In this document: positions 3,466 to 28,500 of the stretch, one piece after another
Position numbering within the stretch: position 1 is the first letter of the stretch
Layout: each line of letters starts with the position of its first letter
Origin: Mobula hypostoma
Taxonomy: Eukaryota
Direction of reading: 5' to 3'
NCBI RefSeq assembly: GCF_963921235.1
Contig: NC_086106.1
Span: 18,600,001-18,664,000 of the forward strand
DNA: 64,000 nucleotides
The notes under the pieces: generated by a model
Seen by the model: only the letters and a program-made list of their open reading frames with translations
The model's database searches: none
Told to the model about the DNA's origin: nothing
Program-made: the position numbers and the translations under genes

Positions 3466-3786
3466 CTGTGTTCTTCCTGATTGATTCCTTCACCGGTGTT
3501 GGCAAACTCTTGTCCTGTATCACACACGAGTACTCAGCCCCACTGTTCCACTCTGCAGCAGGGACTGTCAGTCTGCTGGTGATTATGTCTTCACCTCCGT
3601 TACCGTCTGGACCCAGAGTCCTCACCCCATCTTCCCTCTTCCTTCCGTCCACTTGCCAGGTTACAGTGAATCCCTGTAAATCACGGTGAACCACCTCACA
3701 CAGAATGGTCGCTGTCCTCTTTGTCCAGATCTCTTCGAAGGGAGGTTTGCTTAAAGTCACTGAGGGGCGGGTATCTGAACAGTCAT
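3466..3786 (-). CDS. IgW: IgW constant exon C5 (intact)
   Basis: ctcccag|AT GAC TGT ... AAC ACA G|gtacgt; 321 nt, phase 1/1; DDCSDTRPSVTLSKPPFEEIW...ILCEVV...W...YSCVIQ. Confidence 0.95.
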
Positions 3787-4646
3787 CTGGGAGAAACATC
3801 ACAATTATTATTTCACCATTCCCCAATGGATGAGTTTGTCACTGACAAGACCAGCATTTCCTGTTCATCTCTGGTCAATGATTTGCCAGTCCCATCAAGA
3901 TGAGATGAGACCAATCTACGTTGGTGAAGAAAGGAACCTCCCTTATTGAGCGGACAGGGTAAACACCCTGAGGGAGCGTGAATGAACAAGATCGACCCTT
4001 AGATTGTTTTTGTAGTTCCATGGTCACTTAAAGTGTTACCAGCAACTTATTAAAACAAATACAGAAAATATGCAGTCTTTCAGAGAGTGTCTGTGGAACA
4101 GAAAACAGAGCAAAGTTTTCCATAAAAATATTGCAGAAAATACACTTCATATTTCAAAAATTTAAGTATGAGAAATATTTAGTTTCAGTCACAAATATGA
4201 AAAAGCACTCTTTTTCTCTATTAGGTGTACCAAAAATTTGCTGCTGCTTTGTCAGAATGGTGTGTGTTCAGGCCGCCCTCCAGAGGCTTCTACACATTGT
4301 CCAGGCTGACTATTCCCACACAGGAGCAGAGGGAGAGCTGCTCTGCTGGAAATTCAGTCACATCTGAGGCACGAATCAGAGGCTGGGATTAGGTTCAAAG
4401 GCAGAGGGAGAGAACATTTTGAAGACAAGTATCAGGGATCTCTAGAGTACCTGCCCAATGAAATGATCTGGATTCCCCTCAAGTTGTTAAAACATTTTCT
4501 TAATACAATTATTTCTGTGGTGAAGTTCTGAACGATGTCGGTTGAGAGCAGAAAACAAACAATAATTGGCCGATTTAAGTGCCAAGAGAGATTAAAAAGG
4601 TGAAGACGTTGAGGCTCAGGCAATGGAAGTTCCGGTATTCAGCTCA

Positions 4647-5005
4647 CTTCTCGATGTGGCTTCACTCGCCTCAGCACTGAACTGACTCTGCAGCTGCGGC
4701 CTGCAGCCATCGGCACTCACCTCAGCACTGAGCCTGGCTCCACGGCCGTGGCCTGCAGCCATCGGTCTCCTGCACCGGTTGCAGTGCTGAACTGGCAACG
4801 TGGCTGTGGATTTGTTTGAATTTTTTTATTGTTTACACAATTTGTTCTTTCCTTTTCACACATTGGATGTTTGACTCTGTATTCTATTGTGTTTCTTTGT
4901 TTTGTGGCTGCCTGCAAGAAGAGAATCTCAAGGTTGTATCTGCCTGCAAGAAGAGAATCTCAAGGTGCACATACTTTGATAATAAATGTACTCTGTACTT
5001 TGAAA
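4647..5005 (+). mobile_element. Non-autonomous retroposon with Rex1/Babar-type 3' tail (unit 5 copy)
   Basis: Ends in actttgataataaatgtactctgtactttga, like the tail of the LINE at ~49800; same element follows each C4 copy; 5' edge uncertain. Confidence 0.6.
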
Positions 5006-5119
5006 TTTATCAGTTCACTCACATAACTAAACCAGGGCTGCACCATGATTCAGTGCTGACCTTGAATTAATAGCACAATGTAAACAATTTCAATAATGGG
5101 GTGGGTCTCAGGAACCTAC

Positions 5120-5437
5120 CTTGGACATTCTTCACTTGCTTCTTGATACGGGTGTTGGATGGGGGATGAATCACTGTACAGCTGAAGACTGATTCTGACT
5201 TCCACTCCTGTAAACTCACGGTCAGGAAGTGTCTGGCACTGAAAGTCCACTCCTGCTCCAGAGCGGTCGGTGTAGCGCTGGTGTTGGAGGTGATCACGGT
5301 GCTGTCTTTCTCCCAGGTGACACTTATTTCATCTGGGTAGAATCCAGAGACCACACACTCCAGTGTGGCTGTTTTCCTATTCTTGGTCTCTTCCTGAGCT
5401 GGAGGCAGCAGACTGACTTTGGGACTTTTTATCTCAA
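5120..5437 (-). CDS. IgW: IgW C4-type exon, unit 5
   Basis: ctccag|TT GAG ... GTC CAA G|gtaggt; 318 nt, open; VEIKSPKVSLLPP...LECVVSGFYP...W...FSCTVIH. Confidence 0.93.
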
Positions 5438-5525
5438 CTGGAGTAGACAAGAAAATAAAGGAAATGTCAAACATTTTGACTCAGGTAACTAATGCTGGCC
5501 ATTTAATCGTTGGTCTCTTGCCCAC

Positions 5526-5828
5526 CTTTGGTACTATTGGTCCGTGCTGACACTGGGGAAGATGAAGGAGATTCCTGAGCAGAGCACTCGTACTCCACCC
5601 CACTGAACCACTCCTCCACACTGATCTGGAGTTCACTGAGCACTTTGTAACGGGACCCGTCCCTCTCCGCTTTGTGGGTGAGAATTCCTTTAGTTTTCTC
5701 CTTCCCGCCCACGTGCCAAGAGATGTGGATATCTTCGGGATCTGTACAGATAATTGTACACTTCACGGTAGCAGTCTTGTCGATCCACATCTTTTCAATG
5801 TCGGGATTTTGAATAAAGACACACAATT
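5526..5828 (-). CDS. IgW: IgW C3-type exon, unit 5
   Basis: ccacag|AA TTG ... ACC AAA G|gtgggc; 303 nt, open; ELCVFIQNPDIEKMW...VKCTIIC...W...YECSAQ. Confidence 0.92.
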
Positions 5829-6822
5829 CTGTGGGTTAGAAATGGAAATGCTCAGAATCTTACTGGAGATATTTCCATTGGTTGTGTTAGGTCCAGGAAT
5901 ATCATCAGTACTTGACAGCTGCATTTAATGCAAACAGAATAACAGAAACACCCAGGGCTGAATCATATTCCTATAAGTTTTGATTGAGAGAAGAAATTCA
6001 GAACAAAGGATGTGCTAACGAGGTTTCGAATCCCTTTCTAATAACTGTACCAATCGGTTCACTGTGAGACGGAGCTCTGTGAGACAGAGAAGCATGCAGA
6101 TTTCTCAGCAGAGACACAGCTCAGTAGATTCTATGCTTGGAGACTCAGTGCCATTGATTAGTAACAATGAACACTGTGAATCAATGCAAATCCCTTTCTC
6201 CATCTGGCCTGAGCCTGGGGTTCACTCAGTTTAATAACTTCACATCCCGACATTCCAGTCTCACTGTGGCTGCACCTCTCCTCATCTCTGCAACCTTCAC
6301 AACTCATACAAACTTCAGAAACCATCATATTCTTTCAACTCTGCTCACTCATACACCTGCACTACTTCTGCTGGTGCCTGTGGTTTTAGCATTCTTGCTG
6401 ACAAACACTGAAACCTCTGTCTCACTTGAAATGAGCAGCCATGGTCAGAGTGTATCCATAAGTTAGGGACTGATGAACTGGCAAATGGTTTCAAGTCCCA
6501 ACCCGGTGGATGGGAGTTTAAATTCAATTCATCAATGCTTTTTGGAATAAAATGAAGACTCTGGAAGAATTTGTAGTGATATTTGCTGTGGTAACTTCTG
6601 AAAAGAAATCTCATCTGGGCTGACTGCTATGTGATTCCAGACCTGCAGCAATACAGCTGAACCTGAATCACCATCAGGAATGAGCCAGCAAGTCCCACCG
6701 TTCGAGAGCAATCAGTGATTGATAGGAAATGGTAAATTAAATAAATAGCCCTTTGTTCAGGTTAGTGTCACTTTTGTGTGATTACACTCAAGTGAAGTTG
6801 TTGAGGTCGTCTCCCAATGCAC

Positions 6823-7440
6823 TGTTGGCCAGAAAGAACTACCATCTCTAGATCAGTGAATTTGGACCAGGGATCATTTCCAAATAAGAAGACACATGCG
6901 AGATGTCCTTTGGTTGGATATAACATGCAGGTCTGTGACTGTTGGGGTCTGTCTCTGCCTTGTGTGATCAAGCTGATTGCCGATTGAGAACAAAGAGCCA
7001 TAGATTATTAGATGTCATTCCTCGATCAGAGCCAATAAGAAGGTGTTAGAGGTCAATCAGGTGACTATAGCCAATATCACTGGAATGTAACATTTGAATT
7101 AGTAAGGAATGAATTTAAAAGCAGGTGCTTCAAGTGTGCTGGCAGCAGTGGCTCTGTAGGAGATTCACTATCGTGGATATGAGGTGCCTCACGGATGTGG
7201 AGATTCAAAACGGGGCACCAAGGAACACGTGGCTAGCAGTAAAGTCTCCTTTTTAACTGGTATAATCTTTTTAATATTTGACTGTTCATGGAAGGTCAGG
7301 GAAACTCAGCAGGTGTGCACACAGGTATTGGTTGTGTAAGTTCACATGTTCTTGCATTGAGACAATAAAGGTATTTGTCGGTAAATCCAATTCTCTCTGT
7401 GCCTCCCTGATCATTATTACAAGAGGTGATATTTGTAACA
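6823..7440 (+). mobile_element. Solo LTR (618 bp), antisense to IgW
   Basis: TGTT...AACA termini; 4-bp near-TSD gcac/tcac; empty site in the paralog at ~21570; CCAAT motifs, TTTAAAA and AATAAA (7364-7369) on +. Confidence 0.75.
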
Positions 7441-8469
7441 TCACCATCATCTGTTCACTTACATTGCAGCTCTCTGCACTTTGTGTTCACCATTTACACA
7501 CTTGGTCACCTTCAGGCATGTGGGATGTTTTTGCTCTTTGACATTTAGTGTGGAGCTGATTGTGTTTGTGTCACAGTTGAGACCTTCAATGAGACTGTGA
7601 GTCAGTGTCTTTGTCTGAAGAAAGAGCAGATGTAACACACACGGTTCCAGTCTGACTGGGACGGATCATCTGACAAAGTATGATGTGTATTTCTCAACAT
7701 TCCTCATTTCATAAAGATTATGAGCAATTTTCTTTTAAAACAGAAAATCTGTGGGTGTAGTCTAGATGATCATTGTTGTCGTGTAATATCATAAATATGC
7801 AAACCTAGGTGTACACTGAAGGGTTACTGAATTATGAACCTCAGTTTAATCAGCACTGTGATGTTGTTAAGCATGTTTTCTGCAGTTTTCTCAGTTGTGT
7901 CCAATATCAGCACAGTCTTGAGGTTCAGCAGTCCCTGGGAAATGTGATCCCCACATAAAACCTGACAGAGGCAGGATCGCTCCCCTTATTGCTGAATGCT
8001 GGCATTATTCCACAAGAAGCATATAATTCTATCAATGCTTGGGTAGTTATAACAAAACATTCTCCTTTCTGACATTCCTTGGGATCACTGAGTTTTCCTC
8101 TTGGACTGAATTCAGTGTCCGGCACGTGGATCAATGTAACTTTAGCAATTTGTCTGGTCCAGGATTTACACACAGAGCATGCCAGATTGGACAGGAGACT
8201 GGTCGGACCCCAGTGTCTTGTCTCACCAATTTGTCTTGTGCACAACATTTTCAAAGGGTCATGGTCCTTTGACTGAGCAAATTTGGAATTTCAGCCCTGT
8301 TCACCTTCATCACCTCATGCCTCACAGCCATTGGGTGAAAAACAGGTTCCAGTTCTTGCTGACTGGAGTCAGACGGGAGGGAATCTGGCCAAGGAAACTG
8401 GAATTGGGATCTGAGTCACACTGAAGCAACAATGTACACAAATGAATGAGTGTATGGACAACCAGAAAC

Positions 8470-9085
8470 ACAAGAGATTCTACAGATGCTGGAAATCTTG
8501 AACAACACACACAAAGCGCTGGAGGAACTTGTCAAGTCAAGGCAGCATCTATGGAGGAGAATGAGCTGCTGATCTTTCAGACCAAGTGGCTTCACCGGTA
8601 CTGGAAAGGAAGTGGGCAGAAGCCAGAGTAAGAAGGTGGGTGGAGTAGAAAGGAATACATTCTGTCAGATGAGAGGTGAGACCAGGTGAGGGGGAAAGTG
8701 TGTGGACGGGGGAGGCAGTATGAAGTAAGAAGCTGGTAGGGATAAGTGGAAGAGATAAATGGCTGAAGCAGAAGGAGTCTGACAGGATAGTGGACCATGG
8801 AGGAAAGTGCAGGAGGAAGGGAACCAAATGGAGATGATGGGCAGGTGAGGAGAACTGAATGAATGAGGGTGTATCTAGTATGGGAATGAGAAAAAAATGG
8901 GAGAATAAAGGAGCGGGGTGGATACTGCTGGAAGTTGCAGAAATAAGTATTCGTGCCATCAGGTAGGCAGGTATCTGGATGGAATATGAGGTCCTGACTT
9001 TGGCCTCACCCTGGCAGTAGAGAAGGAAATGGACAGACATGTCAGAATGGGAATGGGAAGTCAAATTGAAATAGCTGGTCACAAG
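8470..9085 (-). mobile_element. Penelope-like element fragment
   Basis: ORF 8549-9082 begins with the degenerate endonuclease tail (FNLTSHSHSDMSVH); terminal acacacacaaa..gctggaggaact motif; paralog at ~22600-23180. Confidence 0.6.
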
Positions 9086-9253
9086 GATATTGAAAAGTCA
9101 AATTGAAATGTGGAGGGGAGAGGTAGTCATTTTAAATAACGTATTTTCATCACTGTCTGTGAAACTTCCATCCCAATGGATACCAGAGGCAGGTCTGGAA
9201 TCCAGTAAGTGGATTGTAAAAGAATTCATTGATGAATTGTATATACAGCCAAT

Positions 9254-9380
9254 CACTTTATTTCACACTTTCCTGCTGAACAATGATACTGTTGGATAGA
9301 ACCATCGGAGAATGTTGCATTGAGATTACTCTGGTAAAAGAACATTGGCACAGGCTCCGAAAAGCAGCTGGGACATTTTC
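9254..9380 (-). pseudogene. 5'-truncated duplicate of the short secretory-tail exon
   Basis: KCPSCFSEPVPMFFYQSNLNATFSDGSIQQYHCSAGKCEIK* is open, but there is no in-phase AG acceptor upstream. Confidence 0.75.
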
Positions 9381-9619
9381 TCATCATGTCAGCAGAGGAG
9401 GCCATCGACAGACATGTCAGAATGGGACTGGGAAGTCAAATTGAAATAGATGGCCATGAGGATATTGGAAAGTCAAATTGAATTTTGGAGGGGAGAGACA
9501 GTTTAAATCATGCGTTTTCTTCTCTATCAAATGTCCATTCCAAAGGATTCCAGTGGCAGGTCTGGAACCCTGTAAATGGATTGTAATGAAATTCATTGAC
9601 GAATTTTATAGAGAACCAA

Positions 9620-9750
9620 TCACTTTATTTCACACTTTCCTGCCGAACAATGGTACTGTCGGGTAGAACCATCTGAGAATGTTGCATTGAGATTACTCTG
9701 GTAAAAGAACATTGGCACACTCTCTGAAAAACAGCGGGGACAATCTCCAC
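9620..9750 (-). CDS. IgW: Cys-rich short-form secretory tail exon, intact, downstream of unit-4 C4
   Basis: tatttccag|GT GGA, phase 1; GGDCPRCFSESVPMFFYQSNLNATFSDGSTRQYHCSAGKCEIK*; four Cys; AATAAA overlaps the last codons (9624-9629). Matches my recollection of the IgW short-form tail. Confidence 0.82.
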
Positions 9751-10280
9751 CTGGAAATAGAAAATTCATTAATGTCAGCATTAAATATTTTCACCTCTTT
9801 TCCTGTGCTTGGAAAAAAGAGAGCCCCACATATTCCCACTCTCTATTCTCTGTATTGCATCCTATTGGGATGAGGTTGTGTCAGCCATGATAAATGAATG
9901 TGCTCTCTGAACCTGGCCGAGGATCTGAGGACACAAGATCACAATATTCACTCGAGGATTGGGCATCAATTCAAAAATAATCCAGGCACCGACATTTCAG
10001 TGAGTGGACAATCAACAGAAGAGTCTCTCAGGAAACACTGGAAACAAGACTCTGGGGACTGAAGCAAATACAAAATTGCAATGATATGTTTTTGAGGAAC
10101 TGACACTGAAGAGACAGTGAAAAGGGAAAATGGAGATTTTCTCCAGATAGCAAAGCATGGGCGTGAGCTTTGCTCACTAACTTATTTTCATTATAACTGC
10201 AGAGATAACTAAAATTATTGAGACAGAATGGACAGGTGACCTAATCTTACACCTTTCCTGCCCAGTAGATGGGGTTAAAA

Positions 10281-10655
10281 CTTCTCGATGAGGCTTCACT
10301 CGCCTCAACACTGAACTGACTCTGCGGCTGCGGCCTGCAGCCATCGGCACTCACCTCAGCACTGAGCCTGGCTCCACGGCCGTGGCCTGCAGCCATCGGT
10401 CTCCTGCACCGGTTGCAGTGCTGAACTGGCAACGTGGCTGTGGATTTACTTCAGGGGGCTCTGCGGTTCAGTTTCTGTGGATTGTTTGTTTGAATTTTTT
10501 TATTGTTTGCACAATTTGTTTTTTTCACACATTGGATGTTTGACTCTGAATTCTATTGTATTTCGTTGTTTTGTGGCTGCCTACAAGAAGAGAATCTCAA
10601 GGTTGCATATGGTGCACATACTTTGATAATAAATGTACTTTGTACTTTGAACTTT
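10281..10655 (+). mobile_element. Non-autonomous retroposon (unit 4 copy), left edge at a duplication junction
   Basis: Same element as 4647-5005; flank switches to C2-intron sequence at ~10280. Confidence 0.6.
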
Positions 10656-10766
10656 AATAGTTCACTCACATAACTAAACCAGGACTGCACCGTGATTCAG
10701 TGTTGACCTTAAATTCATTGCACAATGTAAACAATTTCAATAATGGGTTGAGTCCCAGGACCCTAC

Positions 10767-11084
10767 CTTGGACGTACTCCACTTGCTTCTTGATATGGGT
10801 GTTGGAAGGGGGATGAGTCACTGTACAGCTGAAGACTGATTCTGTCTTCCAATCCTGTAAACTCACGGTCAGGAAGTGTCTGACACTGAAAGTCCACCCC
10901 TGCTCCAGAGCGGTCGGTGTAGCGCTGGTGTTGGAGGTGATCATGGTGTTCCCTTTCTCCCAGATGACATTTATTTGGTCTGGGTAGAATCCAGAGACCA
11001 CACACTCCAGTGTGGCCGTTTTCCAATTCTTCATCTCTTCCTGAGCTGGAGGCAGCAGAGTGACCTTGGGACTTCTTATCATGA
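10767..11084 (-). CDS. IgW: IgW C4-type exon, unit 4
   Basis: ttccag|TC ATG ... GTC CAA G|gtaggg; 318 nt, open. Confidence 0.93.
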
Positions 11085-11172
11085 CTGGAATAGAAAAGAA
11101 AACAAAGGAAATGTCAAACATTTTGACTCAGGTAACTAATGCTGGCCATTTAATCGCTGGTCTTTTACCCAC

Positions 11173-11475
11173 CTTTGGTACTATTGGTCCGTGCTGACAC
11201 TGGGGAAGATGAAGGAGATTCCTGAGCAGAGCACTCGTATTCCACCCCACTGAACCACTCCTCCACACTGATCTGGAGTTCGCTGAGGACTCTGTATCGA
11301 GCTCCGTCCATCTGCGGTGGTTGTTCGACAATTCCTTTAGTTTTCTCCTTCCTGCCAACATGCCAAGAGATGTGGATATCTTCGGGATCTGTACAGATAA
11401 CTGTGCACTTCACCGTAGCGGTCCTGTGGATCCACATCTCTTCAATGTTGGGATTTTGAATAAAGACAGACAATT
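11173..11475 (-). CDS. IgW: IgW C3-type exon, unit 4
   Basis: tcacag|AA TTG ... ACC AAA G|gtgggt; 303 nt, open. Confidence 0.92.
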
Positions 11476-11617
11476 CTGTGAATTAGAAATGGAAATGCTC
11501 AGAATCTTACTGGAGATATTTCCATTGGTTGTGTTAGGTCGAGGCAGATCATCAGTACTTGACAGCTGCATTTAATGCAAACAGAATAACAGAAACACCC
11601 AGGGCTGAATCACTTGG

Positions 11618-11834
11618 CAGTCTGCTGGTGATCATGTCTTCACCTCTGTTGCTGACTGGACCCAGAGTCCTCACCCCATCTTCCCTCTTCCTCTGTCCAC
11701 CTGCTGGGTTACTCAGAATCCCTGTAAATCACTGTGAACCACCTCATACAGAATGGCTGTTGTCCTCTTCGTCCAGGTCTCTTTGAATGAAGGCTTACTT
11801 AAAGTGACTGAGGGGCAGGTATCTGAACAGTCAT
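11618..11834 (-). pseudogene. Truncated pseudo-C5 exon
   Basis: Acceptor AG>GG; first Cys>Tyr; in-frame TGA; homology stops after ITSRL, so the second Cys and donor are missing. Confidence 0.9.
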
Positions 11835-12290
11835 CCGGGAGAAATTATTATTTCACCATTCCCCATTGGCTGACTTTGTCACTGACAAGACCAGCATTTC
11901 CTGTTCATCTCTGGTCAACGATATGCCAGTCCCAAGAAGATGAGATGAGAATAATGTACATTGGTGAAGAAATGAATCTCCCCTGTTGAGCAGACAGGGT
12001 AAACACCCTGAGGGAAAGTAAATGAACAAGATTGGCTGTCACATTGTTTTTTCAGTTTCATGGTGACTAAACTGTTACCAGACACTTTTTAAAACAAATA
12101 CAGAAAATACCCAGCATTTCAGTGTGTGTCTGTGGAAATGGAAAAGGAGTAAATTTCATGTAAAAAATTCCACAAAATTCACTTCTTATTTCAAGTTTTA
12201 AGTATGAGAAATATTTAGTTTTTGTTACAAATATTAAAATGCACTTTTTTTCTCTATTAGGTGTAAGTAAAATTTGCTGCTGCTTTGTCA

Positions 12291-14235
12291 TCGGGCCAAC
12301 CCAGAGCAAGACAGCACCATTGAAAACTATAACAGGCGAGACCATCAATGACAAAGGCAAGTAGATGGAGAGATGGGTGGAGCATTACTTTGAACTCTTC
12401 TCCAGAGAAAACAGCATCTCGGACAGCACGCTAGATGCTGTGGAATGCCTGCCTGTCATGGAGGAACTTGATGCATTGCCGACTGCTGAAGAGTTGAGTA
12501 AAGCCATTGACAGCCTGCCCACTGGGATGGCACCAGGATTGGGTGGCATTCCAGCAGAGGCCATCAAATGTGCAAAGGGTGTCCTGCTAAACCACCTGCA
12601 TAAACTACTGTGCCAGTGCTGGATAGAGGGAACAGTGCCACAAGACATGGGAGACTGCAACATTGTCACCATATATGGGGACAAAGGGGACAGAAGAGAC
12701 TATAACAACTTCAGGGGAATCTCCTTGCTGAGCACTGTTGGGAAGGTCTTCGCCCGTGTGGTCCTGAACAGACTGCAGAAAATAGCCAAAAGGGTATATC
12801 CCGAGTCTCAGTGCAGTTTCAAGTCAGAACGCCCCACAATCAACAGGATCTTCTCCCTTTGACAATAACAAGAGAAATTGCAGAGAGCAAAGACAAACAC
12901 TCTACGTCGCTTTCATTGACCTTACGAAGGCCTTCGACCTTGTGAGCAGAGACGGCCTGTTCAAAATCCTTGCCAGGATTGGTTGTCCCCCGAGGCTCCT
13001 CAGGATAGTTCAGTCATTCCACACAGACATGAAGAGCATCATTCAGTTCGACGGCTCTTCTTCGGAGGCCTTCAACATCCACAGCGGTGCGAAACAAGGC
13101 TGTGTGCTTGCCCCCACCCTGTTTGGCATCTTCTTCGTAGTCATGCTGAAGCACGCCTTTGGAACATCAACTGATGGTGTCTACCTCCACACCAGATCAG
13201 ACTGGAGGCTGTTCAGCCTGTCCCGGCTGAGGGCGAAAGCCAAGGTTTGTGAAGTACTCATCAGGGACATGTTGTTTGCAGACGACGCAGCACTGGCAAC
13301 ACACTCTGAAGAGCAATTGCAACGCCTCATGGACAGCTTCTCAACAGCTGCCAGGATTTCAGCTTGACCATCAGCCTGAAGAAGACCAACATGTTGGGCC
13401 AAGGCGTTGAGCACTCCTTGCCATTACCATCAACAACTACGAGCTGGAGGTAGTTCACAAGTTTACATTTCTAGGCTCCACCATCACGGACAGTCTCTCC
13501 CTAGACCCCGAGATCAACAGATGGATTGGACAAGCAGCCTCAACATTCACCAGGCTGACAAAGGGAGTCTGAAAGAACAGAAAGCTGACGACGCACACCA
13601 AGGTTGCAGTCTACAGGGCCTACATCCTCAGCACACTGCTTTATGGCAGCGAGACCTGGAGCCTCTACTACAGACGAAAGAGGCGTCTCAATGCCTTCCA
13701 CCTTCGCAGCCTGAGATCCATCCTGGAGATCAAGTGGACTGACCTAGTCACCAACAATTAGGTCCTGGCCCACGCCCAGATACCCAGCCTCTTCACCCTG
13801 CTCCAACAACGCCGTCTCCGCTGGCTGGGCCACGTACACCGCATGTCAGACGGGAGGATCCCGAAAGACCTGCTGTACGGGGAACTGGCCTCCGGCAAGA
13901 GAGCACAAGGGTGACCCCATCTTCGTTTCAAAGATGTCTGCAAGAGAGACATGAAATCACTGAACATGAACATCGAGAGGTGGGAAATCTACGCAGAGGT
14001 CTAAAAAGAGGAGAGAGAAGCTGAGGCTTGCTGTTGAAGAAAAGCGTACTCGTCGGAAAAACAGCACCAAGACAACACTGGAGGACAGTGCCTTCAAGTG
14101 CAGTCGCTGCCGCTGAGACTGTCACTCCTGTGTGGGCCTCTACAGCCACAACAGACACTGCTCTACCAACACAGACTGAAGCAATACTTTCCGGGCACAG
14201 ATCCAAGGTCTCGCGAGACTAACGGATGCCACCAA
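12291..14235 (+). mobile_element. 5'-truncated RTE-clade LINE with 6-bp TSD
   Basis: RT ORF pieces 12365-12862 (RGISLLSTVGKVFARV) and 12942-13367 (MLFADDAAL); TSD ttgtca at 12285-12290 and 14236-14241; empty site in paralogs (e.g. ~16641). Confidence 0.9.
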
Positions 14236-14629
14236 TTGTCAGAATGTTGTGTGTTCAAGCCGCCCTCCAGAGACACATTGACCAGGCTGACTATTCCCAC
14301 ACAGGAGCAGAGGGAGAGCTGCTGTGCTGGAAATTCAGTCACATCTGAGGCACTGATCGGAGGCTGGGATTATGTTCAAAGGTAGAGGGAGGGAGCATTT
14401 TGAAGACAAGTATCAGGAGTCTCCAGAGTGCCTGCCAGTGAAATGATCCGGATTCCCCTCAAGTTATGAAAGTATTTTCCGGGATACAATTATTTCTGTG
14501 GTGAAAGTCTGGATTATGTTGGCTGAAAGTGGAGAACAAACCTAAGATGGGATAATCTTATCACCTAGGCAGATTAAAAAGATGAAGACTTGACACCAAA
14601 AGTGAAGGCCAAACTGCCGTTCATCTTAC

Positions 14630-15970: not shown

Positions 15971-16187
15971 CAGTCTGCTGGTGATCATGTCTTCACCTCT
16001 GTTGCTGACTGGACCCAGAATCCTCACCCCATCTTCCCTCTTCCTCTGTCCACCTGCCGGGTTACTCAGAATCCCTGTAAATCACTGTGAACCACCTCAT
16101 ACAGAATGGCTGTTGTCCTCTTCGTCCAGATCTCTTCGAATGAAGGCTTACTTAAAGTGACTGAGGGGCAGGTATCTGAACAGTCAT
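15971..16187 (-). pseudogene. Truncated pseudo-C5 exon
   Basis: Same lesions as 11618-11834 (GG acceptor, Cys>Tyr, TGA, same truncation point). Confidence 0.9.
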
Positions 16188-17040
16188 CCGGGAGAAATTA
16201 TTATTTCACCATTCCCCAATGGCTGAGTTTGTCACTGACAAGACCAGCATTTCCTGTTCATCTCTGGTCAATGATATGCCAGTCCCAAGAAGATGAGATG
16301 AGATGAGAATAATGTACATTGGTGAAGAAATGAATCTCCCCTGTTGAGCAGACAGGGTAAACACCCTGAGGGAAAGTAGATGAACAAGATTGGCTGTCAC
16401 ATTGTTTTTTCAGTTTCATGGTGACTGAACTGTTACCAGACACTTTTTAAAACAAATACAGAAAATAGCATTTCAGAGTGTGTCTGTGGAATTGGAAATG
16501 GAGCAAATTTTCACGGAAAAAAATCCCACAAAATACACTTCATATTTCAAATTTTAAGTATGAGAAATATTTAGTTTTTGTCCTAAATAATAAAATGCAC
16601 TCTTTTTGTCTATCAGGTGTAACTAACATTTGCTGCTGCTTTGTCAGAATGTAGTGTGTTCAGGCCGCCCTCCAGAGGCTTCTACACATTGTCCAGGCTG
16701 ACTATTCCCACACAGGAGCAGAGGGAGAGCTGCTCTGCTGGAAATTCAGTCACATCTGAGACACTGATCGGAGGCTGTGATTAGGTTCAAAGGTAGAGGG
16801 AGGGAGCATTTTAAAGACAAATATCAGGGATCTCCAGAGTGCCTGTCCAGTGAAATGATCCGGATTCCCCTTAAGTTATGAAAGTATTTTCTGGGATACT
16901 CTTATTTCTATGGTAAAAGTGTGGATTATGTTGGTTGAGAGTGGAAAACAAACCGATGATTGGCCGATTTAAGTGCCAAGAGAGATGAAAAAGATGAAGG
17001 CATTGAGGCTGAGTCAATGGACAAACCGGTATTCAGCTCA

Positions 17041-18231: not shown

Positions 18232-18371
18232 CTGTTGATTAGAAATTGAAATGCTCAGAATCTTACTGGAGATATTTCTATTGGTTGTGTTAGGTCCAGG
18301 CAGATCATCAGTACATGTCAGCTGCATTTAATGCAAACAGAATAACAGAAACACCCAGGGCTGAATCGTTA

Positions 18372-18590
18372 GTCAGTCTGCTGGTGATCATGTCTTCACC
18401 TCTTGCTGACTGGATGAGAGTCCTCATCCCACCTTCCCTCTTCTTTCCGTTCATCTGCCCAGGTGACACTGAGTCCCTGTAATTCACTGTGAACCACTTC
18501 ACACAGAATGGTCACTGTCCTCTTTGTCCAGATCTCTTCGAAGGGAGGTTTGCTTAAAGTAACTGAGGGGTTTCGTATCTGAACAGTCAT
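18372..18590 (-). pseudogene. Truncated pseudo-C5 exon with intact acceptor and frameshifts
   Basis: ctcccag acceptor kept; +1 insertion near the start (GATACGAAACCCC vs GATACCCGCCCC); second +1 after the Trp codon; truncated after ITSRLT. Confidence 0.88.
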
Positions 18591-19404
18591 CTGGGAGAAA
18601 CGGCTCAATTATTATTTCACCATTTCCCAATGGACAAGTTTGTCACTGACAAGATCAGCATTTGCTGTTCATCTCTGGCCAATGATCTGCCAGTCCCATC
18701 AAGACGAGATGAGACCAATCTACATTGGTGAAGAAAGGAATCTCCCCTACTGAGCAGACAGGGTAAATACCCTGAGCAAACGTAAATGAACAAGATTGGC
18801 CCTTACATTGTTTTCGCAGTTACATGGTCACAAACTGTTACCAGCCACTTATTAAAACAAATACAGGAAATACCCAGCATTTCAAAGTCTGTCTGTGGAA
18901 CGGGAAATGGAGCCAAGTTTCACATGAATATCTTCCAGAAAATACACTTCATATTTCAAAAATAAGTATTAGAAATATTTATTTTTTTGTCACAAATATT
19001 TAAATGCACCTTTTTCTCTTTTAGGTGTAACTAAAATTTGGTGCTGCTTTGTCAGAATGTTGTGTGTTCAGGCTGCCCTCCAGAGGCTTCTACACATTGT
19101 CCAGGCTGACTATTCCCACACAGGAGCAGAGGGCGAGCTGCTCTGCTGGAAATTCCGTCACGACTGAGGCACTGACCGGAGGCTGGAATATTGTTCAAAG
19201 ACAGACTGTCCAGTAAAATGGTCTAGATTCTCTTCAAGTGATGAGCCATTTTCAGAGATGCAATTGTTTCTATGGTGAAGCTTCTGGATTATGTTGGTTG
19301 AGAGCAGAAAACAAACCAAAGATTGGCTGATTTTATTACTGAGCCAGATTAAAAAGATTAATGCGTTGAGGGTGAAGGTGAAGTAGGAGCCAGTATTCAG
19401 CTCA

Positions 19405-19730
19405 CTGCTCTATGAGGCTTCACTCACCTCAGCACTGAGCCTGGCTCCACGGCCGTGGCCTGCAGCCATCGGTCTCCTGCACCGGTTGCAGTGCTGAACT
19501 GGCAACGTGGCTGTGGATTTACTTCAGGGGACTCGGAGTTCAGTTTCTGTGAATTGTTTGTTTGCATTTTTTTATTGTTTGCACAATTTGTTTTTTTCAC
19601 ACATTGGATGGTTGACTCTGAATTCTATTGTATTTCTTTGTTTTGTGACTGCCTGCAAGAAGAGAATCTCAAGGTTGTATATGGTGCACATACTTCGATA
19701 ACAAATGTACTTTGTACTCTGAACTTTAAT
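19405..19730 (+). mobile_element. Non-autonomous retroposon (unit 1 copy, shorter 5' part)
   Basis: Same element and tail as 4647-5005. Confidence 0.55.
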
Positions 19731-19838
19731 AGTTCACTCACAAAACTAAACCAGAACCACACCGTGATTTAGTGTTTACTTTGAATTCATAGCACAATGT
19801 AAACAATTTGAATAATGGGATGCGTCCCAGGACCCTAC

Positions 19839-20156
19839 CTTGGACATTCTTCACTTGCTTCTTGATACGGGTGTTGGAGGGGGGATGAGTCACTGTACAG
19901 CTGAAGACTGATTCTGACTTCCATTCCTGTAAACTCACGGTCAGGAAGTGTCTGGCACTGAAAGTCCACCCCTGCTCCAGAGCGGTCGGTGTAGCCCTGG
20001 TGTTGGAGGTGATCACGGTGTTGCCTTTCTCCCAGATGACATTTATTTGGTCCGGGTAGAATCCGAAGATCACACACTCCAGTGTGGCCGTTTTCCTATT
20101 CTTGGTCTCTTCCTGTGATGGAGGCAGCAGAGTGACCTTGGGACTTTTTATCTCGA
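19839..20156 (-). CDS. IgW: IgW C4-type exon, unit 1
   Basis: ttccag|TC GAG ... GTC CAA G|gtaggg; 318 nt, open. Confidence 0.93.
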
Positions 20157-20243
20157 CTGGAATAGACAAGAAAAGAAAGGAAATGTCAACATTTTTGCCC
20201 AGGTCACGAATGCTGGCCACTTAACCGCTGGTCTCTTACCCAC

Positions 20244-20546
20244 CTTTGGTACTATTGGTGCGTGCTGACACTCGGGAAGATGAAGGAGATTCCTGAGCAG
20301 AGCACTCGTACTCCACCCCACTGAACCACTCCTCCACACTGATCTGGAGTTCACTGAGCACTCTGTATCGGGACCCGTCCCTCTCCGCTTGATGGGTGTG
20401 AACCCCTTTAGTTTTCTCCTTCCCGCCCACATGCCAAGAGATGCGGATATTTTCAGGATCTGTACAGATAACTGTGCACTTCACGGTAGCAGTCTTGTCG
20501 ATCCACATCTCTTCAATATTGGGATTTTGAATAAAGACAGCCAATT
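20244..20546 (-). CDS. IgW: IgW C3-type exon, unit 1
   Basis: ccacag|AA TTG ... ACC AAA G|gtgggt; 303 nt, open. Confidence 0.92.
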
Positions 20547-22599
20547 CTGTGGATTAGAAATGGAAATGCTCAGAATCTTACTGGAGATATTTCCATTGGT
20601 TGTGTCAGGTCCAGGCAGATCATCAGTACAGGACAGCTGCATTTAATGCAAACAGAATAACAGAAACACCCAGGGCTGAATCACGTGCCTCATATTCCTA
20701 TAAGTTTGATTGAGAAAAGAAATTCAGAACAAAGGATGTGCTAACGAGGTTTCGAATCCCTTTCTAATAACTGTACCAATCGGTTCACTGTGAGATGGAG
20801 CTCTGTGAGACAGAGAAGCATGCAGATTTCTCAGCAGAGACACAGCTCAGTATATTCTTTGCTTGGAGACTCAGTGCCATTGATTAGTAACAATGAACAC
20901 TGTGAATCAATGAGAATCCCTTTCTCCATCTGGGCTGAGCCTGGGATTCACTCAGTTTAATAACTTCACATCCCGACATTCCAGTCTCACTGTGGCTGTG
21001 CCTCTCCTCATCTCTGCAACCTTCACCACCCACACGAGCTTCAGACAACATCGTATCCTTTCAACTCTGCTCACTCATACACCTGCACTACTTCTGCTGG
21101 TGCCTGTGGTTTTAGCATTCTTGCTGACAAACACTGAAACCTCTGTCTCACTTGAAATGAGCAGCCATATGGTCAGAGTGTATCCATAAGTTAGGGACTG
21201 ATGAACTGGCAAAGTGGGTTCAAATCCCAACCCGGTGGATGGGAGTTTAAATTCAATTCATCAATGCTCTCTGGAATAAAAAGAAGACTACGGAGGTATT
21301 TGTAGTGTTATTCTCTGTGGTAATTTCCGGAGAGAAGTCTGGTCTGGTCTGGCTGGTTTGTGACTCCAGACCTGCAGCAACACGGCTGGAGCTGAATCAC
21401 CATCAGGAATGAGGTAGCAAGTCCCTCAGTTCCAGAGAGATCAGTGATTGACGGGAAATGATAAATGAATAAAACAACTCTTTGATCAAGTGTTGAGTCA
21501 CCTGCCCTCTGGGTTAGTGTCAGTTTTGTGTGATTGCACTCAAGTGAAGTTGTTGAGGTCGTCTCCCAATGCACGATCGTCAGTTCACTTACATTGCAGC
21601 TCTCTGCACTTTGTGTTCACCATTTACACACTCGGTCACCTTCAGGCACGTGGGGTGTTTTTGCTCTTTGACATTTAGTGTAGAGGCTGATTGTGTTTGT
21701 GTCATGGCTGAGACCTTCAATGAGACTGTGAGTCAGTGTCTTTGTCTGAAGAAAGAGCAGACGTAACACACACAGTTCCAGTCTAACTGGGCCGGATCAT
21801 CCGACAAGGTATGATGTGTATTTCTTCACCTTTCTCATTTCAGTAAGATTATGAGCAATTTTCTTTCAAAACAGAAAGTCCGTGGGTGTAGTCCAGATGA
21901 TCATTGTTGTCGTGTAATATACAAATATGCAAATCTAGGTGTACACTGAAGGGTCATTGAACTGTGAATCTCAGTTTAATGAGCACTGTGATGTTGTTAA
22001 ACATGTTTTCTGCAGGTTTCCCAGTTATGTCCCATATCAGCACGGTCTTGATGTTCATCAGTCTCTGGGAAATGCGATCCCCTCATAAAACCTGACAGAG
22101 TCAGAATTGCTCCGCTTATTGCTGAATGCTGGTGTAATTCCACAAGAAGCGTATAATCCCTCAATGCTTGGGCAATTTGAACAAAACATTCTCCTTTCTA
22201 ACATTCCTTGCAGTCACTGAGTTTCCCTTTTGGACTGAATTCAGTGTCCGGTACATGGATCAATGTAACTTTAGCAATTTGTCTGGTCCAGGATTTACAC
22301 ACAAAGCATGTCAGATTGGACAGGAGATTGGTTAGACCCCTGTGTCTTGTCTCACCAACTTGTCTTGTGCCCAACATTATCAAAAGGTCATCCATCCTTT
22401 GGCTGAGTCAATTTGGAATTTCAAACCTGTTCACCTTCATCACCTCGTGCCTCACAGTCATTGGGTGAAAAACAGGTTCCAGTTCTTGCTGACGGGAGTC
22501 AGACAGGGGGGAATCTGGCTAAGGAAACTGGAATTGGGATCTGAGTCACACTGAAGCAACAATGTACACAAATGAATGAGTGTATGGACAACCAGAAAC

Positions 22600-23180
22600 A
22601 CAAGAGATTCTACAGATGCTGGAAATCTTGAACAACACACACAAAGTGCTGGAGGAACCTGGCAAGTCAGGCAGCATCTGTGGGGGGAATAAACAGCCAA
22701 TCTTTTGTGCCAAGTGGTTTAACCGTACTGAAAGGAAGTGAGCAGAAGCCAGAATAAGAAGATGGGAGGAGTAGAGAGGAATACATTCTGTCAGATGAGA
22801 GGTGATACCAGGTGAGGGGGAAAGTGTGTGGATGGAGGAGGGGTATGAATTAAGAAGCTGGTCGGGGATAAGTGGAAGAGATAAATGGCTGAAACAGAAG
22901 GTATCTGAGAGGACAGTGGACCATGGAGGAATGTGCAGGAGCAGGGGAACCAAATGGAGATGATGGGCAGGTGAGGAGAAGTGAATGAATGAGGGTGTAT
23001 CTAGTATGGGAATGAGAAAAAAATGGGAGAATAAAGGAGCGGGGTGGATACTGCTGGAAGTTGCAGAAATAAGTATTCATGCCATCAGGTTGGCAGGTAT
23101 CTGGATGGAATATGAGGTCCTGACTTTGGCCTCACCCTGGCAGTAGAGAAGGAAATGGACAGACATATCAGAATGGGAAT
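22600..23180 (-). mobile_element. Penelope-like element fragment (paralog of 8470-9085)
   Basis: Colinear with 8470-9085; same terminal motif. Confidence 0.6.
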
Positions 23181-23332
23181 GGGAAGTCAAATTGAAATGT
23201 GGAGAGGAGAGATAGTCATTTTAAATAACATATTTTCATCACTGTCTGTTAAACCTGTATCCCAATGGATACCAGAGACAGGTCAAGAATCCAGTAAATG
23301 GATTGTAAAAGAATTCATTGATGAATTGTATT

Positions 23333-23460
23333 CTTTATTTCACACTTTCCTGCTGAACAATGATACTGTTAGGTAGAAGCATCGGAAAATGTTGCATTGA
23401 GATTACTCTGGTAAAAGAACATTGGCACAGGCTCCAAAACACAGCTGAGACAGCTTCCAC
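23333..23460 (-). CDS. IgW: Short-form secretory tail exon after C2, with premature stop
   Basis: catttccag|GT GGA; GGSCLSCVLEPVPMFFYQSNLNATFSDAST*(TAA 23371-23369), then QYHCSAGKCEIK; paralogs have CAA or CGA at this codon. Confidence 0.8.
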
Positions 23461-24066
23461 CTGGAAATGGAAGATTCATAGATCTGTACATAACATCCTA
23501 TTGGGATGGGGTTGTGTCAGCCATGATAAATGCATGTTGTCTCTGAACCTGGCTGAGGATCTGAGGACACAAGGTCACAACATTCACTCGAGGATTGGGC
23601 ATTAATTCAAAAATAATCCAGGTACCTACATTTCAGTGAGCGGACAATCAACAGGAGAGTCTCTCAGGAAACACTGGAAACAGACTCTTGAGACTGAAGC
23701 AAATACAAAATATGCAGAGATATTTTTTGAGGAACTAACACTAAGCAGACAGTGAAAAGGGAACAGGGAGATTTTCTCCAGATGGTAAAGCATGGGACGT
23801 GAGCTTTGCTCAGTAACTTATTTTCATTATAACTACAAACAAAGACAACTAAAATTATTGAGACAGAATGGACAGGTGACCTGATCTTACACCTTTCCTG
23901 CCCAGTAGATGGGGTTAAAGCTGCTGGTGATCTGAACTGATTCAAAGTGCAAAGATCAGCTGTACATCACTCAACAAGATTGACAGTAGGGACAGGAATT
24001 TGTGGGAGTGTCAGTTAATTAGTTTAGTGCTGTAAGATAATAAATTTTTCTTCAGCCATCACTCAC

Positions 24067-25548: not shown

Positions 25549-28500
25549 CTGAAATGGAAAGAAAATCACAGATGGTTCTCTGAATAAATGCATTACTGGT
25601 AGAGAAAGGAGATGTAATATAAAGCAGTAATTTTTAAAATTATTCACCCGATTGTACAAAGCCGATATCACTTTTAACACTCAGCTGTGAGTCTGTGTCG
25701 CTGAGGCAGGAGGGTGTGGATCAATCCCACAGTGGCAACTTGGACTCACAATCCAGGCCAACACTCCAGTGCAGGACTCAGGCAGGGACCCAATGTCCGA
25801 TCGGTGGGATTTCAGTCAAATACCAAAGTGACAATCTGTCTCTCATCCAAATACAATTCCTGATTCTGAGAAGTCTGTTAGCACTTGATCAACGAAGTTT
25901 ACAAAAAAAGTAAGATTTAGAAGTAACTTATTGGAATAATTCTGACGTGTTCAGTGTTGCTGGTGATGAGAGGAGTGAGTGGTGTGGATATAGTGGTACC
26001 AAGTCTCCAGCACCATGTGTGCAATATAGTGGAGGTTGGGAAATGGACTCTGCTTCTGAAATTAAACTCAACAGACTACATGATGCAGCTGACACTGCCT
26101 CACATATTTACCGTGTGTGACTGAGCAAGAATTACAACCCCACTGAGTCTGTGGAAACTTCTGGCTAACCGGGAGGGAATGGTAACTTGCATCAGAAAGG
26201 ACAGAGGAACTGTGGAAATACATTAGCCCAGACTCTGTGGAGAAGTGTTGGCTAACACAACCGACAGTGACGATGAGACTCCTGGGCAGATGCAGAAATC
26301 TCAAAATGTCATTAGATGTAGGTGATATTCTTAGTGAAAAACCAGCCCAGAGAGTCCAGTGAGGAAATGCAGGTTGTGGCAATTCCCAAACACTTAACAT
26401 GCAAAATACACTTGAAAGCACTGGTTCCCAATTCATTTCACTAGAAAAGGAGAAGTGTTGACTTACCACGGTAAGTAAAAGTGTGAAGATCAATTAACTA
26501 ATTGACCAATTGACAGTTTTGACAGGTGGATACGTTGAGGGGATGTGGTTTGACCAGTTGTCAGAATTACCTTGAACAGTGTTGCGTCATGATTGACACT
26601 GTCAATGACAGATTGTTACTGGTGGATGAGGTTAAAATCACCCAAAAAGACTGTGTGGACACAGCAGAACATGCAGGAAGTCTGGGAGTAGGACACTCGT
26701 GGGAGAGTATGTGTCAGACAGTGTGAATTGCAGTAGATGAGGGCTTTGTTATCCAACAGTAAGATGGTCAACTGACACACACACAGGTTTCAGATTGATT
26801 CTGGTATCGGCAGGGCAGCAAACTCAACATTTGGAGTGGAAGTGGAGTGGTCACAATTTCAATCAGGAGCAAAATAATGAAATTTTCACCTCACAGTCAT
26901 CACTCTGGGATGAAGGGCATAAAATATTGAAATCTGGGTTTCAAACAGAATAAATATAAATCAATAAATATAACAAGTAAATAGGAATCGATATAATGTA
27001 ACTGGTCAGTAATGACAGCTGCATTGTTTTGAAACATTTCCAGGTGACACTGGGGACTGTGAACTCAGAACATTTGCCTTCCTGAGCAAACACAGGTGAT
27101 TCAGGTTGACAGGACAGGCAGGGCAGAGAAATGGTCCCTTTCTCATTCCTTTCAGACTGAGCCTGAAACAACCAGTGAAATGCTGACAACAGACTCCCCA
27201 TCGGGGACACAACTTCTGTCAAACAGCGGGACAAGCCGACCCGTGCTGTGGGTGAAGTGTCACAGGAGAGAAAGTACAGGGCACGGTGCCAACTGGCCCA
27301 TGTCCACACAGACCGGGCTGAATGGTGCTGGTTTAACCTGCTGGGACTCTCCCCACACTCCTACACAGGGAAAGCTGCAACCTTACTGGGCCTCTGGATT
27401 CTGAAGACCTGGGGTGAGATGTATCGAGGCCTCAGCATCAAGTAGCCTCAGACACAAAGTAAACAAGGGGTGGAGGCTGTCTTGTGTCAAAGCTGTCATG
27501 TAATTAACAGGTTTTAAACATCTTGGAGACATTGAGGTAAATTTCTGTAGAACAGATAATTTCTTTTATTTAAAATAATAAATCTATATGACATTTAAAA
27601 CACAGAAATAACTCGTAACTAATTACTTTCCCGACAGCTGAGAATCCTCAGTCATTTGGATGGGAGCTGTGATCCTTGCCAGGTCCGGCCTGTGAGGGAA
27701 TTGTTGAGGTGGATTTCCCAGTGTTACCCTGGGGAGTCCAACAGGGTCCAGTACCACGTGTTAGAGTGTGGTGACAGCTCTGGTGGCATCTGTCACTCAG
27801 TAAATCCCGGGGTACAGTGGTCTGTGGAACTGTGAGACTGACTCCAGTGTAAGTGACTGAACACTGGTGATTCCCTTTGGAATTGCCAGTCACAGCCAGC
27901 ACCATTTCATCCACACCATCCTCAGCCTCCCGGATTCACAGGGATGGGCTGGTCAGCTGTGGTATGAGGAACCTCACTGCTCTTTATCAATGTTCACTCC
28001 TGACAACTGGGGAATTACTGAGCCAAAGACCTGTGACCATTTGGACGACCTACAACCAAATAGCATCTGTCTATTCATCTACTGCACAATCAAGATTCAG
28101 ATGAGGAGTTCCCAGTGGTGTGGAGTTTTAGGAATTGTAGGGTAAAAGAGACCATTCCCTTCCAACATCACCCAAACAGACTAGATTGTCATGTTGTAGT
28201 TCAGATTGTGGGAACAAGATGCAGAGAAGTTGGATGTTTAGTCCCCCCATATGAAGTGACACACTGCAGAAGTACTTGCTGGGTTGGGAAAGGCTCTGGG
28301 ATGTTCTGGGGTTGCAGAAGTCAGTGAAAAACAAATTGTTTTCATCAAAATAAATTCAGTAAAATAAAACTGGAAACAGTGTAGTGGCCAGAAATCAGAC
28401 TGACAGAGTTTGGTGAAGGATCACTGATGTGAAACATTAACTCTGTTTCTCACCCACAGATGTTCCCTGAGCTGCTCAGTGTTGGCAGTGCAGGAGGCAC

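What the first reader, a model, noticed from the sequence alone, without database searches (positions are those of the whole stretch)
9254..9750. Intact Cys-rich secretory tail relocated deep into the array: predicted 10-domain secreted isoform
Seen: the only fully intact tail exon (four Cys, NAT sequon, stop, AATAAA) lies after unit-4 C4, in phase with its donor; a second, acceptor-less copy follows. Known: this tail type normally caps the 2-domain short IgW. Inference: the gene can end after 10 C domains with this tail (~1,200 aa) or after 14 with the tailpiece, giving a length ladder from alternative terminal exons.
Basis: partly seen in the sequence, partly recalled or inferred. Interest (0 to 1): 0.75.

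Follow-up and report, generated by a model that had tools for sequence, protein, structure and literature searches.

The report
Spare secretory tail exon in ray IgW
A devil-ray antibody gene (IgW) carries an intact extra copy of the cysteine-rich "short-form" end exon deep inside its repeated constant-domain exons, but the RNA available shows the gene splicing past it, so the predicted 10-domain secreted antibody remains unproven.

Summary
On the minus strand, 9750-9620 is a complete terminal exon. It has a branch point, a pyrimidine tract and an AG. It is in phase 1 with the donor of the fourth C4 exon (10767). It encodes 43 codons with four Cys and an NAT sequon, ends in TGA, and AATAAA overlaps the stop. 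A 5'-truncated copy without an acceptor follows at 9375-9253. The canonical copy after C2 (23460-23368) is cut short by a TAA. All ten upstream C exons are intact, giving 1071 aa of constant region plus tail.

The tail sits there because the block 10285-3566 is a paralogue of the block after C2 (23925-18372).

Assembled RNA contigs from two runs of what is probably the same species join 10767 to 5828, which skips the tail. No 10767-to-9750 join was listed. Coverage specific to tail A is zero or at intron level.

In favour of use: tail A differs from its sister copies with pN/pS of about 0.25, a red-stingray gene model joins C3-C4 to the same tail, and nurse-shark IgW makes secreted forms with 2, 4, 6 or 8 C domains.

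Verdict: a real and competent spare terminal exon whose use is unproven. It is a new member of a known kind. The scan noted this same stretch once before (s1-142680).

The parts
10767..11084 (-). C4 exon of the fourth C3-C4 pair. Its phase-1 donor (CAA G|gtaggg) is at 10767/10766.
   Evidence: RNA contigs end or join exactly at 10767.
9858..10285 (-). Intron segment upstream of tail A. It is 91% identical to the C2-tail intron (23494-23925). The segmental-duplication junction with the C4-C5-type intron lies at about 10280-10285.
9620..9750 (-). Tail A, a complete Cys-rich secretory terminal exon. It has a phase-1 acceptor, 43 codons, 4 Cys, an NAT sequon, a TGA stop at 9622-9620 and AATAAA at 9629-9624.
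   Evidence: It is 83% identical to the tail of Hemitrygon akajei XP_072884910.1.
9380..9619 (-). 3' flank of tail A, with the predicted cleavage region near 9600. It is the upstream member of a local tandem duplication of about 370 nt.
   Evidence: A contig in run X10 runs through it, covering 9420-9705.
9253..9375 (-). Tail B, a 5'-truncated copy that starts about 6-8 nt into the exon. It has no acceptor. Its ORF, stop and AATAAA (9262-9257) are kept.
5526..5828 (-). C3 exon of the fifth pair. It is the acceptor that the C4u4 donor actually uses in the RNA contigs.
   Evidence: Join 5828-10767 (CT..AC on the plus strand, which is GT..AG on the minus strand) in runs X12 and X14. Exon checked.
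23368..23460 (-). Tail C, the canonical tail exon after C2. It is truncated by a TAA at codon 31 and has lost the conserved QYHCSAGKCEIK end. A further 12 nt are missing after AATAAAG.
3566..10285 (-). Distal paralogous block: partial C2-tail intron, tails A and B, the tail-C3 intron, C3u5, C4u5 and the 5' part of C5. It is 85-91% identical to 18372-23925.

Best explanation
The stretch holds a genuine, structurally complete extra copy (tail A) of the cysteine-rich terminal exon that normally ends the two-domain short IgW. A copy that was truncated from the start (tail B) follows it. Both lie in the 4.9-kb intron between the fourth and fifth C3-C4 exon pairs of one IgW heavy-chain gene. They are there because a block of about 6 kb was duplicated. 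That block runs from part of the C2-tail intron through the tail, the tail-C3 intron, C3 and C4 to the start of C5. If tail A is used, it would act as an alternative 3'-terminal exon. Splicing of a phase-1 C donor to its acceptor, followed by cleavage at its AATAAA, would compete with splicing on to the next C3 exon. In the RNA available, the gene splices past it (C4u4 to C3u5). Tail A is therefore best read as a spare terminal exon, created by duplication, that is skipped by default. The 10-domain secreted chain is at most a minor or cell-type-restricted product. Shown: the anatomy, the duplication and the skipping join. Inferred: the competition mechanism and any use at all.
For: - Exon anatomy and phase.
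- Only three tail copies in the window.
- Paralogous blocks 10285-3566 and 23925-18372, and the A/B tandem duplication with its junction inside the exon.
- The join 10767 to 5828 appears in two RNA-like runs of organism A. No 10767-to-9750 join is among those listed.
- Depth on 9500-9899 is 0 in X12 and X14, while the neighbouring exons have depth 13-60.
- In X10 the depth there is about 10, the same as in the introns. Its contigs cover 9420-9705 continuously, through the predicted poly(A) site.
Against: - Tail A looks maintained. Against the inferred ancestor of B and C it has pS 0.168 and pN 0.042, a ratio of 0.25.
- Under neutral substitution of 8-16% per site, the chance of keeping the AG, ORF, stop, 4 Cys, sequon and AATAAA together is only 0.115-0.016.
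- A RefSeq model in the stingray Hemitrygon akajei joins C3-C4 to the same tail with the same junction, VQGGKCPR.
- Contigs drop rare forms. The tissues are unknown, two weak joins were not displayed, and this cluster is only weakly expressed in those runs.
Confidence: 0.5

Rival explanations
1. Tail A is a regularly used alternative terminal exon. In some cells, for example plasma cells with high cleavage/polyadenylation activity, the C4u4 donor splices to 9750 and the transcript ends near 9600. This would give a secreted chain of V plus 10 C domains with the four-Cys tail. Every C exon is in phase 1, so exon skipping could also give 2-, 4-, 6- and 8-domain versions. One of these is a C2-to-tail-A short form, which would replace the disabled tail C.
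For: - All signals are intact and in phase.
- There are signs of purifying selection.
- The invariant C-terminal QY.C...KCEIK, shared from sawshark to rays, is kept in A but lost in tail C.
- The H. akajei model XP_072884910.1 is C3-C4-tail.
- Nurse-shark IgW makes secreted forms with 2, 4, 6 or 8 C domains by alternative RNA processing (PMC5192425 and PMC4279169, citing Zhang et al. 2013).
Against: - No junction contig appears in four RNA-like runs.
- Coverage specific to tail A is zero in the two runs that show the skipping join.
- No protein fragment or gene model with this junction from Mobula is in the protein collections.
- The stingray model may rest on protein homology only.
Confidence: 0.35
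2. Tail A owes its intactness to recent import, not to use at this position. Its exon and 3' flank would have been overwritten by gene conversion, or by unequal exchange, from the functional tail of another IgW cluster. Its good condition would then say nothing about function here, and it is silent.
For: - A is about twice as far from B and C as they are from each other. Flank identities are 79-83% against 93.6%. Yet the intron just upstream of A is 91% like the intron upstream of C.
- An X10 contig matches A's coding part exactly but differs at 5 places within 9579-9612. This suggests a second A-type copy or allele.
- The genome holds many IgW clusters (unchecked notes).
Against: No donor locus could be examined. 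The same pattern is explained by an old A/B duplication followed by loss of one copy near C2.
Confidence: 0.1
3. The arrangement is an assembly artefact, a mis-joined repeat array.
For: The array is highly repetitive: its units are 90-96% identical.
Against: RNA contigs join the u4-specific C4 end to the u5-type C3 start, as the assembly predicts. X10 contigs match 9420-9562 without any difference. The duplication junctions are clean and unique.
Confidence: 0.03

Closest known systems
Cys-rich secretory tail of the short (2 C domain) IgW/IgX of sharks and skates ('splenic IgW, short secretory form')
   Same: The sequences are homologous: 76-83% identity to ray tails and 50% to the sawshark tail, with the QY.C...KCEIK end invariant. 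Both are separate phase-1 terminal exons with their own stop and poly(A) signal.
   Different: Here the intact copy follows the fourth C3-C4 pair, ten C domains in, rather than C2. The copy after C2 is truncated.
Nurse-shark IgW clusters with six to eight C exons and interspersed secretory exons (Zhang, Du Pasquier and Hsu 2013, J Immunol 191:3410). I know this from reviews PMC5192425 and PMC4279169 and from my memory of the abstract. The paper itself was not held.
   Same: Both show duplication of a C-exon pair, with terminal exons lying between C exons. In nurse shark, alternative RNA processing gives secreted forms of 2, 4, 6 or 8 C domains.
   Different: Here there are five C3-C4 pairs, and the second tail lies after pair four. 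Its use is not shown. I could not check whether the nurse-shark post-C4 exon is homologous to this Cys-rich tail.
Hemitrygon akajei gene model XP_072884910.1 (C3-C4-tail)
   Same: It has the same junction, C4 ...VQ|GG.CPR..., and the same tail.
   Different: It is a computed partial model and I could not see its RNA support. Its genomic DNA was not retrievable, so I do not know whether the two positions are orthologous.
Tandem C-exon amplification in teleost and sturgeon IgD and in coelacanth IgW
   Same: Blocks of C exons are amplified in tandem within one gene (PMC5192425).
   Different: Those arrays are not reported to carry a copied secretory terminal exon inside them.

Membership tests
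IgW short-form Cys-rich secretory tail exon | Sequence homology to the tails of IgW short secretory forms | tested here: met
   phmmer gives E 8e-16 to H. akajei, 6e-12 to M. birostris and 1.5e-4 to P. japonicus models, all named 'splenic IgW, short secretory form-like'. Alignment.
IgW short-form Cys-rich secretory tail exon | A separate exon with a phase-1 acceptor, an in-frame stop and its own poly(A) signal | tested here: met
IgW short-form Cys-rich secretory tail exon | Lies directly downstream of C2 and ends a two-C-domain chain | tested here: not met
   Tail A lies after the fourth C4. Only the truncated tail C lies after C2.
IgW short-form Cys-rich secretory tail exon | Spliced onto a C exon in mRNA | tested here: inconclusive
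   No 10767-to-9750 join is among the listed joins, but only assembled contigs of small runs were available and two weak joins were not displayed.
Interspersed secretory exons of elasmobranch IgW (nurse-shark type) | A terminal exon located between C-domain exons of one cluster | tested here: met
   Tail A and tail B lie between C4u4 and C3u5. Tail C lies between C2 and C3u1.
Interspersed secretory exons of elasmobranch IgW (nurse-shark type) | Alternative RNA processing yields secreted isoforms of different length | tested here: inconclusive
   Only the skipping join was seen.
Tandemly amplified IgW/IgD C-exon arrays | Repeated, intact, in-phase copies of a C-exon block | tested here: met
   There are five C3-C4 pairs, 90-96% identical and all open with AG/GT.

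The most novel reading that the evidence does not exclude
Rays keep a second secretory programme. A Cys-rich terminal exon placed behind C4-type exons is maintained by selection and shared with stingrays. In this devil-ray gene it would end a giant secreted IgW of ten C domains, or a ladder of 2 to 10 domains, that carries the effector tail otherwise known only on the two-domain form.
Probability: 0.25. Interest if true: 0.5.

Novelty: new member of a known kind. Interest (0 to 1): 0.3.

Why it matters
IgW/IgD is the least understood ancient antibody class, and the function of the Cys-rich short-form tail is unknown. If tail A is used, one gene could put the same effector tail on stalks from 2 to 10 domains, which would be a natural experiment on how antibody reach and tail function combine. 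If it is not used, the locus still shows how segmental duplication scatters ready-made terminal exons through an antibody gene. That process is the raw material for the isoform diversity described in nurse shark.

Tried and rejected
- **Short junction fragments.** A search with the C4-end plus tail part of the stingray model (P0001:195-276) found no candidates. The whole model found only three proteins, and no Mobula C4-tail model was among them.
- **Genomic DNA from relatives.** DNA around the H. akajei and M. birostris models could not be fetched because the files were too large. The sawshark protein is not on record. Synteny of a post-C4 tail could therefore not be tested.
- **Other phmmer hits.** The remaining hits (ankyrin-repeat, PKD, VSP and similar proteins) are spurious matches to repetitive proteins.
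- **Primary literature.** Zhang et al. 2013 was not held, whether asked for by DOI or by PMC id. Paper searches for 'secretory exons' and for Mobula IgW found nothing relevant.
- **History of the C3-C4 units.** Pairwise identities are a mosaic of 90-96%, probably because of gene conversion, so the order of duplications could not be resolved.
- **Selection on the 41-nt core.** All three copies are identical over this core. That is expected from protein-level constraint plus the close B-C relationship, so I do not count it as separate evidence.

Full report
**What is there.** The window has no N. It holds one IgW heavy-chain cluster on the minus strand:

| Feature | Coordinates | Note |
|---|---|---|
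| V | about 33151-32654 | |
| J | about 32200 | |
| C1 | 25548-25249 | |
| C2 | 24366-24067 | |
| tail C | 23460-23368 | |
| C3-C4 pair u1 | 20546-19839 | |
| C3-C4 pair u2 | 18231-17524 | |
| C3-C4 pair u3 | 15828-15121 | |
| C3-C4 pair u4 | 11475-10767 | |
| C3-C4 pair u5 | 5828-5120 | |
| C5 | 3786-3466 | |
| C6 with tailpiece | 2815-2430 | |

- Three frameshifted C5 fragments (18630-18359, 16197-15971, 11844-11603) precede u2, u3 and u4 respectively.
- All three fragments end at the equivalent of 3566, inside the true C5 exon. They were therefore truncated when they arose, at the junction of a C3-C4-C5 tandem duplication.
- Every listed C exon is open, flanked by AG and GT, and in phase 1.
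- An earlier, unchecked note of this scan names the genome as the devil ray Mobula hypostoma. My closest protein matches come from Mobula birostris and a stingray.

**Checking the observation.**
- Tail A (9750-9620) follows the acceptor ctgacattaatgaattttctatttccag.
- It completes the codon G|GT left open by the C4u4 donor (CAA G|gtaggg at 10767).
- It reads GDCPRCFSESVPMFFYQSNLNATFSDGSTRQYHCSAGKCEIK, then TGA. AATAAA (9629-9624) overlaps the last codons and a GU-rich stretch follows.
The 14-domain constant region is 1470 aa.
- Tail B (about 9375-9253) keeps the frame, stop and AATAAA but begins 6-8 nt into the exon. What lies upstream of it is the end of the tail-A block, so it never had an acceptor.
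- Tail C has a good acceptor but a TAA at codon 31, and 12 nt are missing after AATAAAG.
- There are no further copies in the window.

**How the tail got there.** A self-comparison shows continuous paralogy between two blocks:

| Distal segment | Proximal segment | Identity | Content |
|---|---|---|---|
| 9858-10285 | 23494-23925 | 91% | part of the C2-tail intron |
| 7442-9375 | 21572-23452 | 89% | tail and the tail-C3 intron |
| 3567-6822 | 18372-21574 | 85% | C3, C4 and the 5' part of C5 |

- At 10280-10285 this block abuts the normal C4-C5-type intron of unit 4.
- The tail was therefore not moved. It was copied together with its introns and the following exons.
- A local tandem duplication of about 370 nt (9380-9742 and 9005-9375, 84% identical) made tails A and B.

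One point stays unexplained. In the 3' flank, B and C are 93.6% alike, but A is only 82.6% like B and 79.4% like C. There are two possible readings. The A/B duplication may be older than the large duplication, with the block near C2 later losing one copy. Alternatively, A was overwritten from another IgW cluster.

**RNA evidence.** I laid contigs of four RNA-like runs on 5500-11499 at 96% likeness.
- X10, X12 and X14 come from organism A, which is probably the source species. X9 comes from organism B.
- X12 and X14 each contain a contig joining 10767 to 5828, with GT..AG on the minus strand. This is C4u4 spliced directly to C3u5, which skips both tails.
- The u4-specific exon end is matched without differences (record 14).
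- No join from 10767 to 9750 is among the 15 listed. Two weaker joins were not displayed.
- In X12 and X14 the depth on 9500-9899 is zero, while the neighbouring exons have depth 13-60.
- In X10, tail A is covered at depth about 10, the same as the introns of this gene in that run. The contigs run on from 9705 to 9420, through the predicted cleavage site.
- X9 shows very high depth on B/C-type tail sequence, with the Thr codon at 9296 that the M. birostris model also has. Tail-bearing transcripts are therefore abundant in that sample. They are closest to tail B/C, and their source gene could not be identified.
- Contigs cannot prove absence, and the tissues are unknown.

**Evidence that leaves use open.**
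- Between A and the inferred ancestor of B and C, pS is 0.168, about the divergence of the flanks. pN is 0.042, a ratio of 0.25.
- Neutral simulation gives a chance of 0.115 (at 8% substitutions per site) to 0.016 (at 15.8%) that the AG, ORF, stop, four Cys, sequon and AATAAA all survive.
- A phmmer search of 1.8 billion representative proteins found the tail in only three real clusters:
  - a M. birostris model, C1-C2-tail;
  - a sawshark model, leader-C1-C2-tail;
  - a Hemitrygon akajei model (XP_072884910.1) that is C3-C4-tail, with the junction ...KNVQGGKCPRGFS, the same join as predicted here.
- The C-terminal QY.C...KCEIK is invariant in all of these tails. Tail A has it and tail C has lost it.
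- I could not see whether the stingray model rests on RNA, and I could not fetch its DNA.

**Comparison with what is known.**
- Reviews state that nurse-shark IgW clusters have six to eight C exons. They make secreted forms with 2, 4, 6 or 8 C domains by alternative RNA processing. [quoted passage not shown]
- From memory, the abstract of Zhang et al. 2013 speaks of two interspersed secretory exons. The paper was not held.
- Tandem amplification of C-exon blocks is known from teleost and sturgeon IgD and from coelacanth IgW (PMC5192425).
- The present locus combines both habits: five C3-C4 pairs, with a copied terminal exon behind the fourth.
- That makes it a new member of a known kind, not a new kind.

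**Verdict.**
- The anatomy is real and exactly as described.
- The most likely reading is that tail A is a spare terminal exon created by duplication, which the gene normally splices past (0.5).
- Regular use as an alternative terminal exon remains a live rival (0.35), supported by signs of constraint and by the stingray model. It would give a 10-domain chain, or 2- to 8-domain chains by exon skipping, including a rescue of the short form that tail C can no longer end properly.
- Recent import from another cluster without use here (0.1) and an assembly error (0.03) are less likely.
- Raw-read or long-read RNA from lymphoid tissues would settle it.

**Earlier notes of this scan.** Notes on this window about the five C3-C4 pairs (s1-141830) and the truncated tail C (s1-144540) agree with what I tested.

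Noticed in passing
window 23368-23460 (-): The canonical tail exon after C2 has a TAA at codon 31, which removes the QYHCSAGKCEIK end that is invariant from sawshark to rays. It also lacks 12 nt after AATAAAG. This gene's ordinary short form would therefore carry an atypical two-Cys tail.
   Followed up: partly
window 18359-18630, 15971-16197, 11603-11844 (-): Three C5 pseudo-exons are all cut at the equivalent of 3566 inside the true C5 exon, and all are frameshifted. They mark the junction of the C3-C4-C5 tandem duplication and lack a donor, so they must be skipped.
   Followed up: partly
window 12290-14236: A retroelement fragment with reverse-transcriptase-like ORFs on the plus strand is inserted between C4 of unit 3 and the next C5 pseudo-exon.
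   Followed up: no
window 27648-27914 (-): An ORF in the J-C1 intron is 75% identical over 60 aa to an internal piece of a Hemitrygon akajei predicted protein (P0010: V domain, this piece, then the start of C3). It could be a conserved intronic element, a cryptic exon or a shared repeat.
   Followed up: partly
window 9311-9351, 9678-9718, 23388-23428 (-): A 41-nt core of the tail (VPMFFYQSNLNAT) is identical in all three copies, although the flanks differ by 6-20%.
   Followed up: partly
window 9380-9750 versus 9005-9375 and 23090-23460: Tail A is about twice as divergent from tails B and C as they are from each other, although the intron upstream of A is 91% like the one upstream of C. The order of events, or a gene conversion from another cluster, is unresolved.
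   Followed up: partly
window 9100-9499 in run X9 (organism B): Depth on B/C-type tail sequence is extremely high, comparable to the C3 and C4 exons. The A>G change at 9296 gives the Thr seen in the M. birostris model. Cys-rich-tail transcripts appear to be a dominant IgW form in that sample.
   Followed up: no
window 8300-8500, 8900-9100, 10300-10700: Intronic stretches have high RNA depth and many small 'skips' in all runs. They are probably dispersed repeat fragments that are transcribed elsewhere.
   Followed up: no
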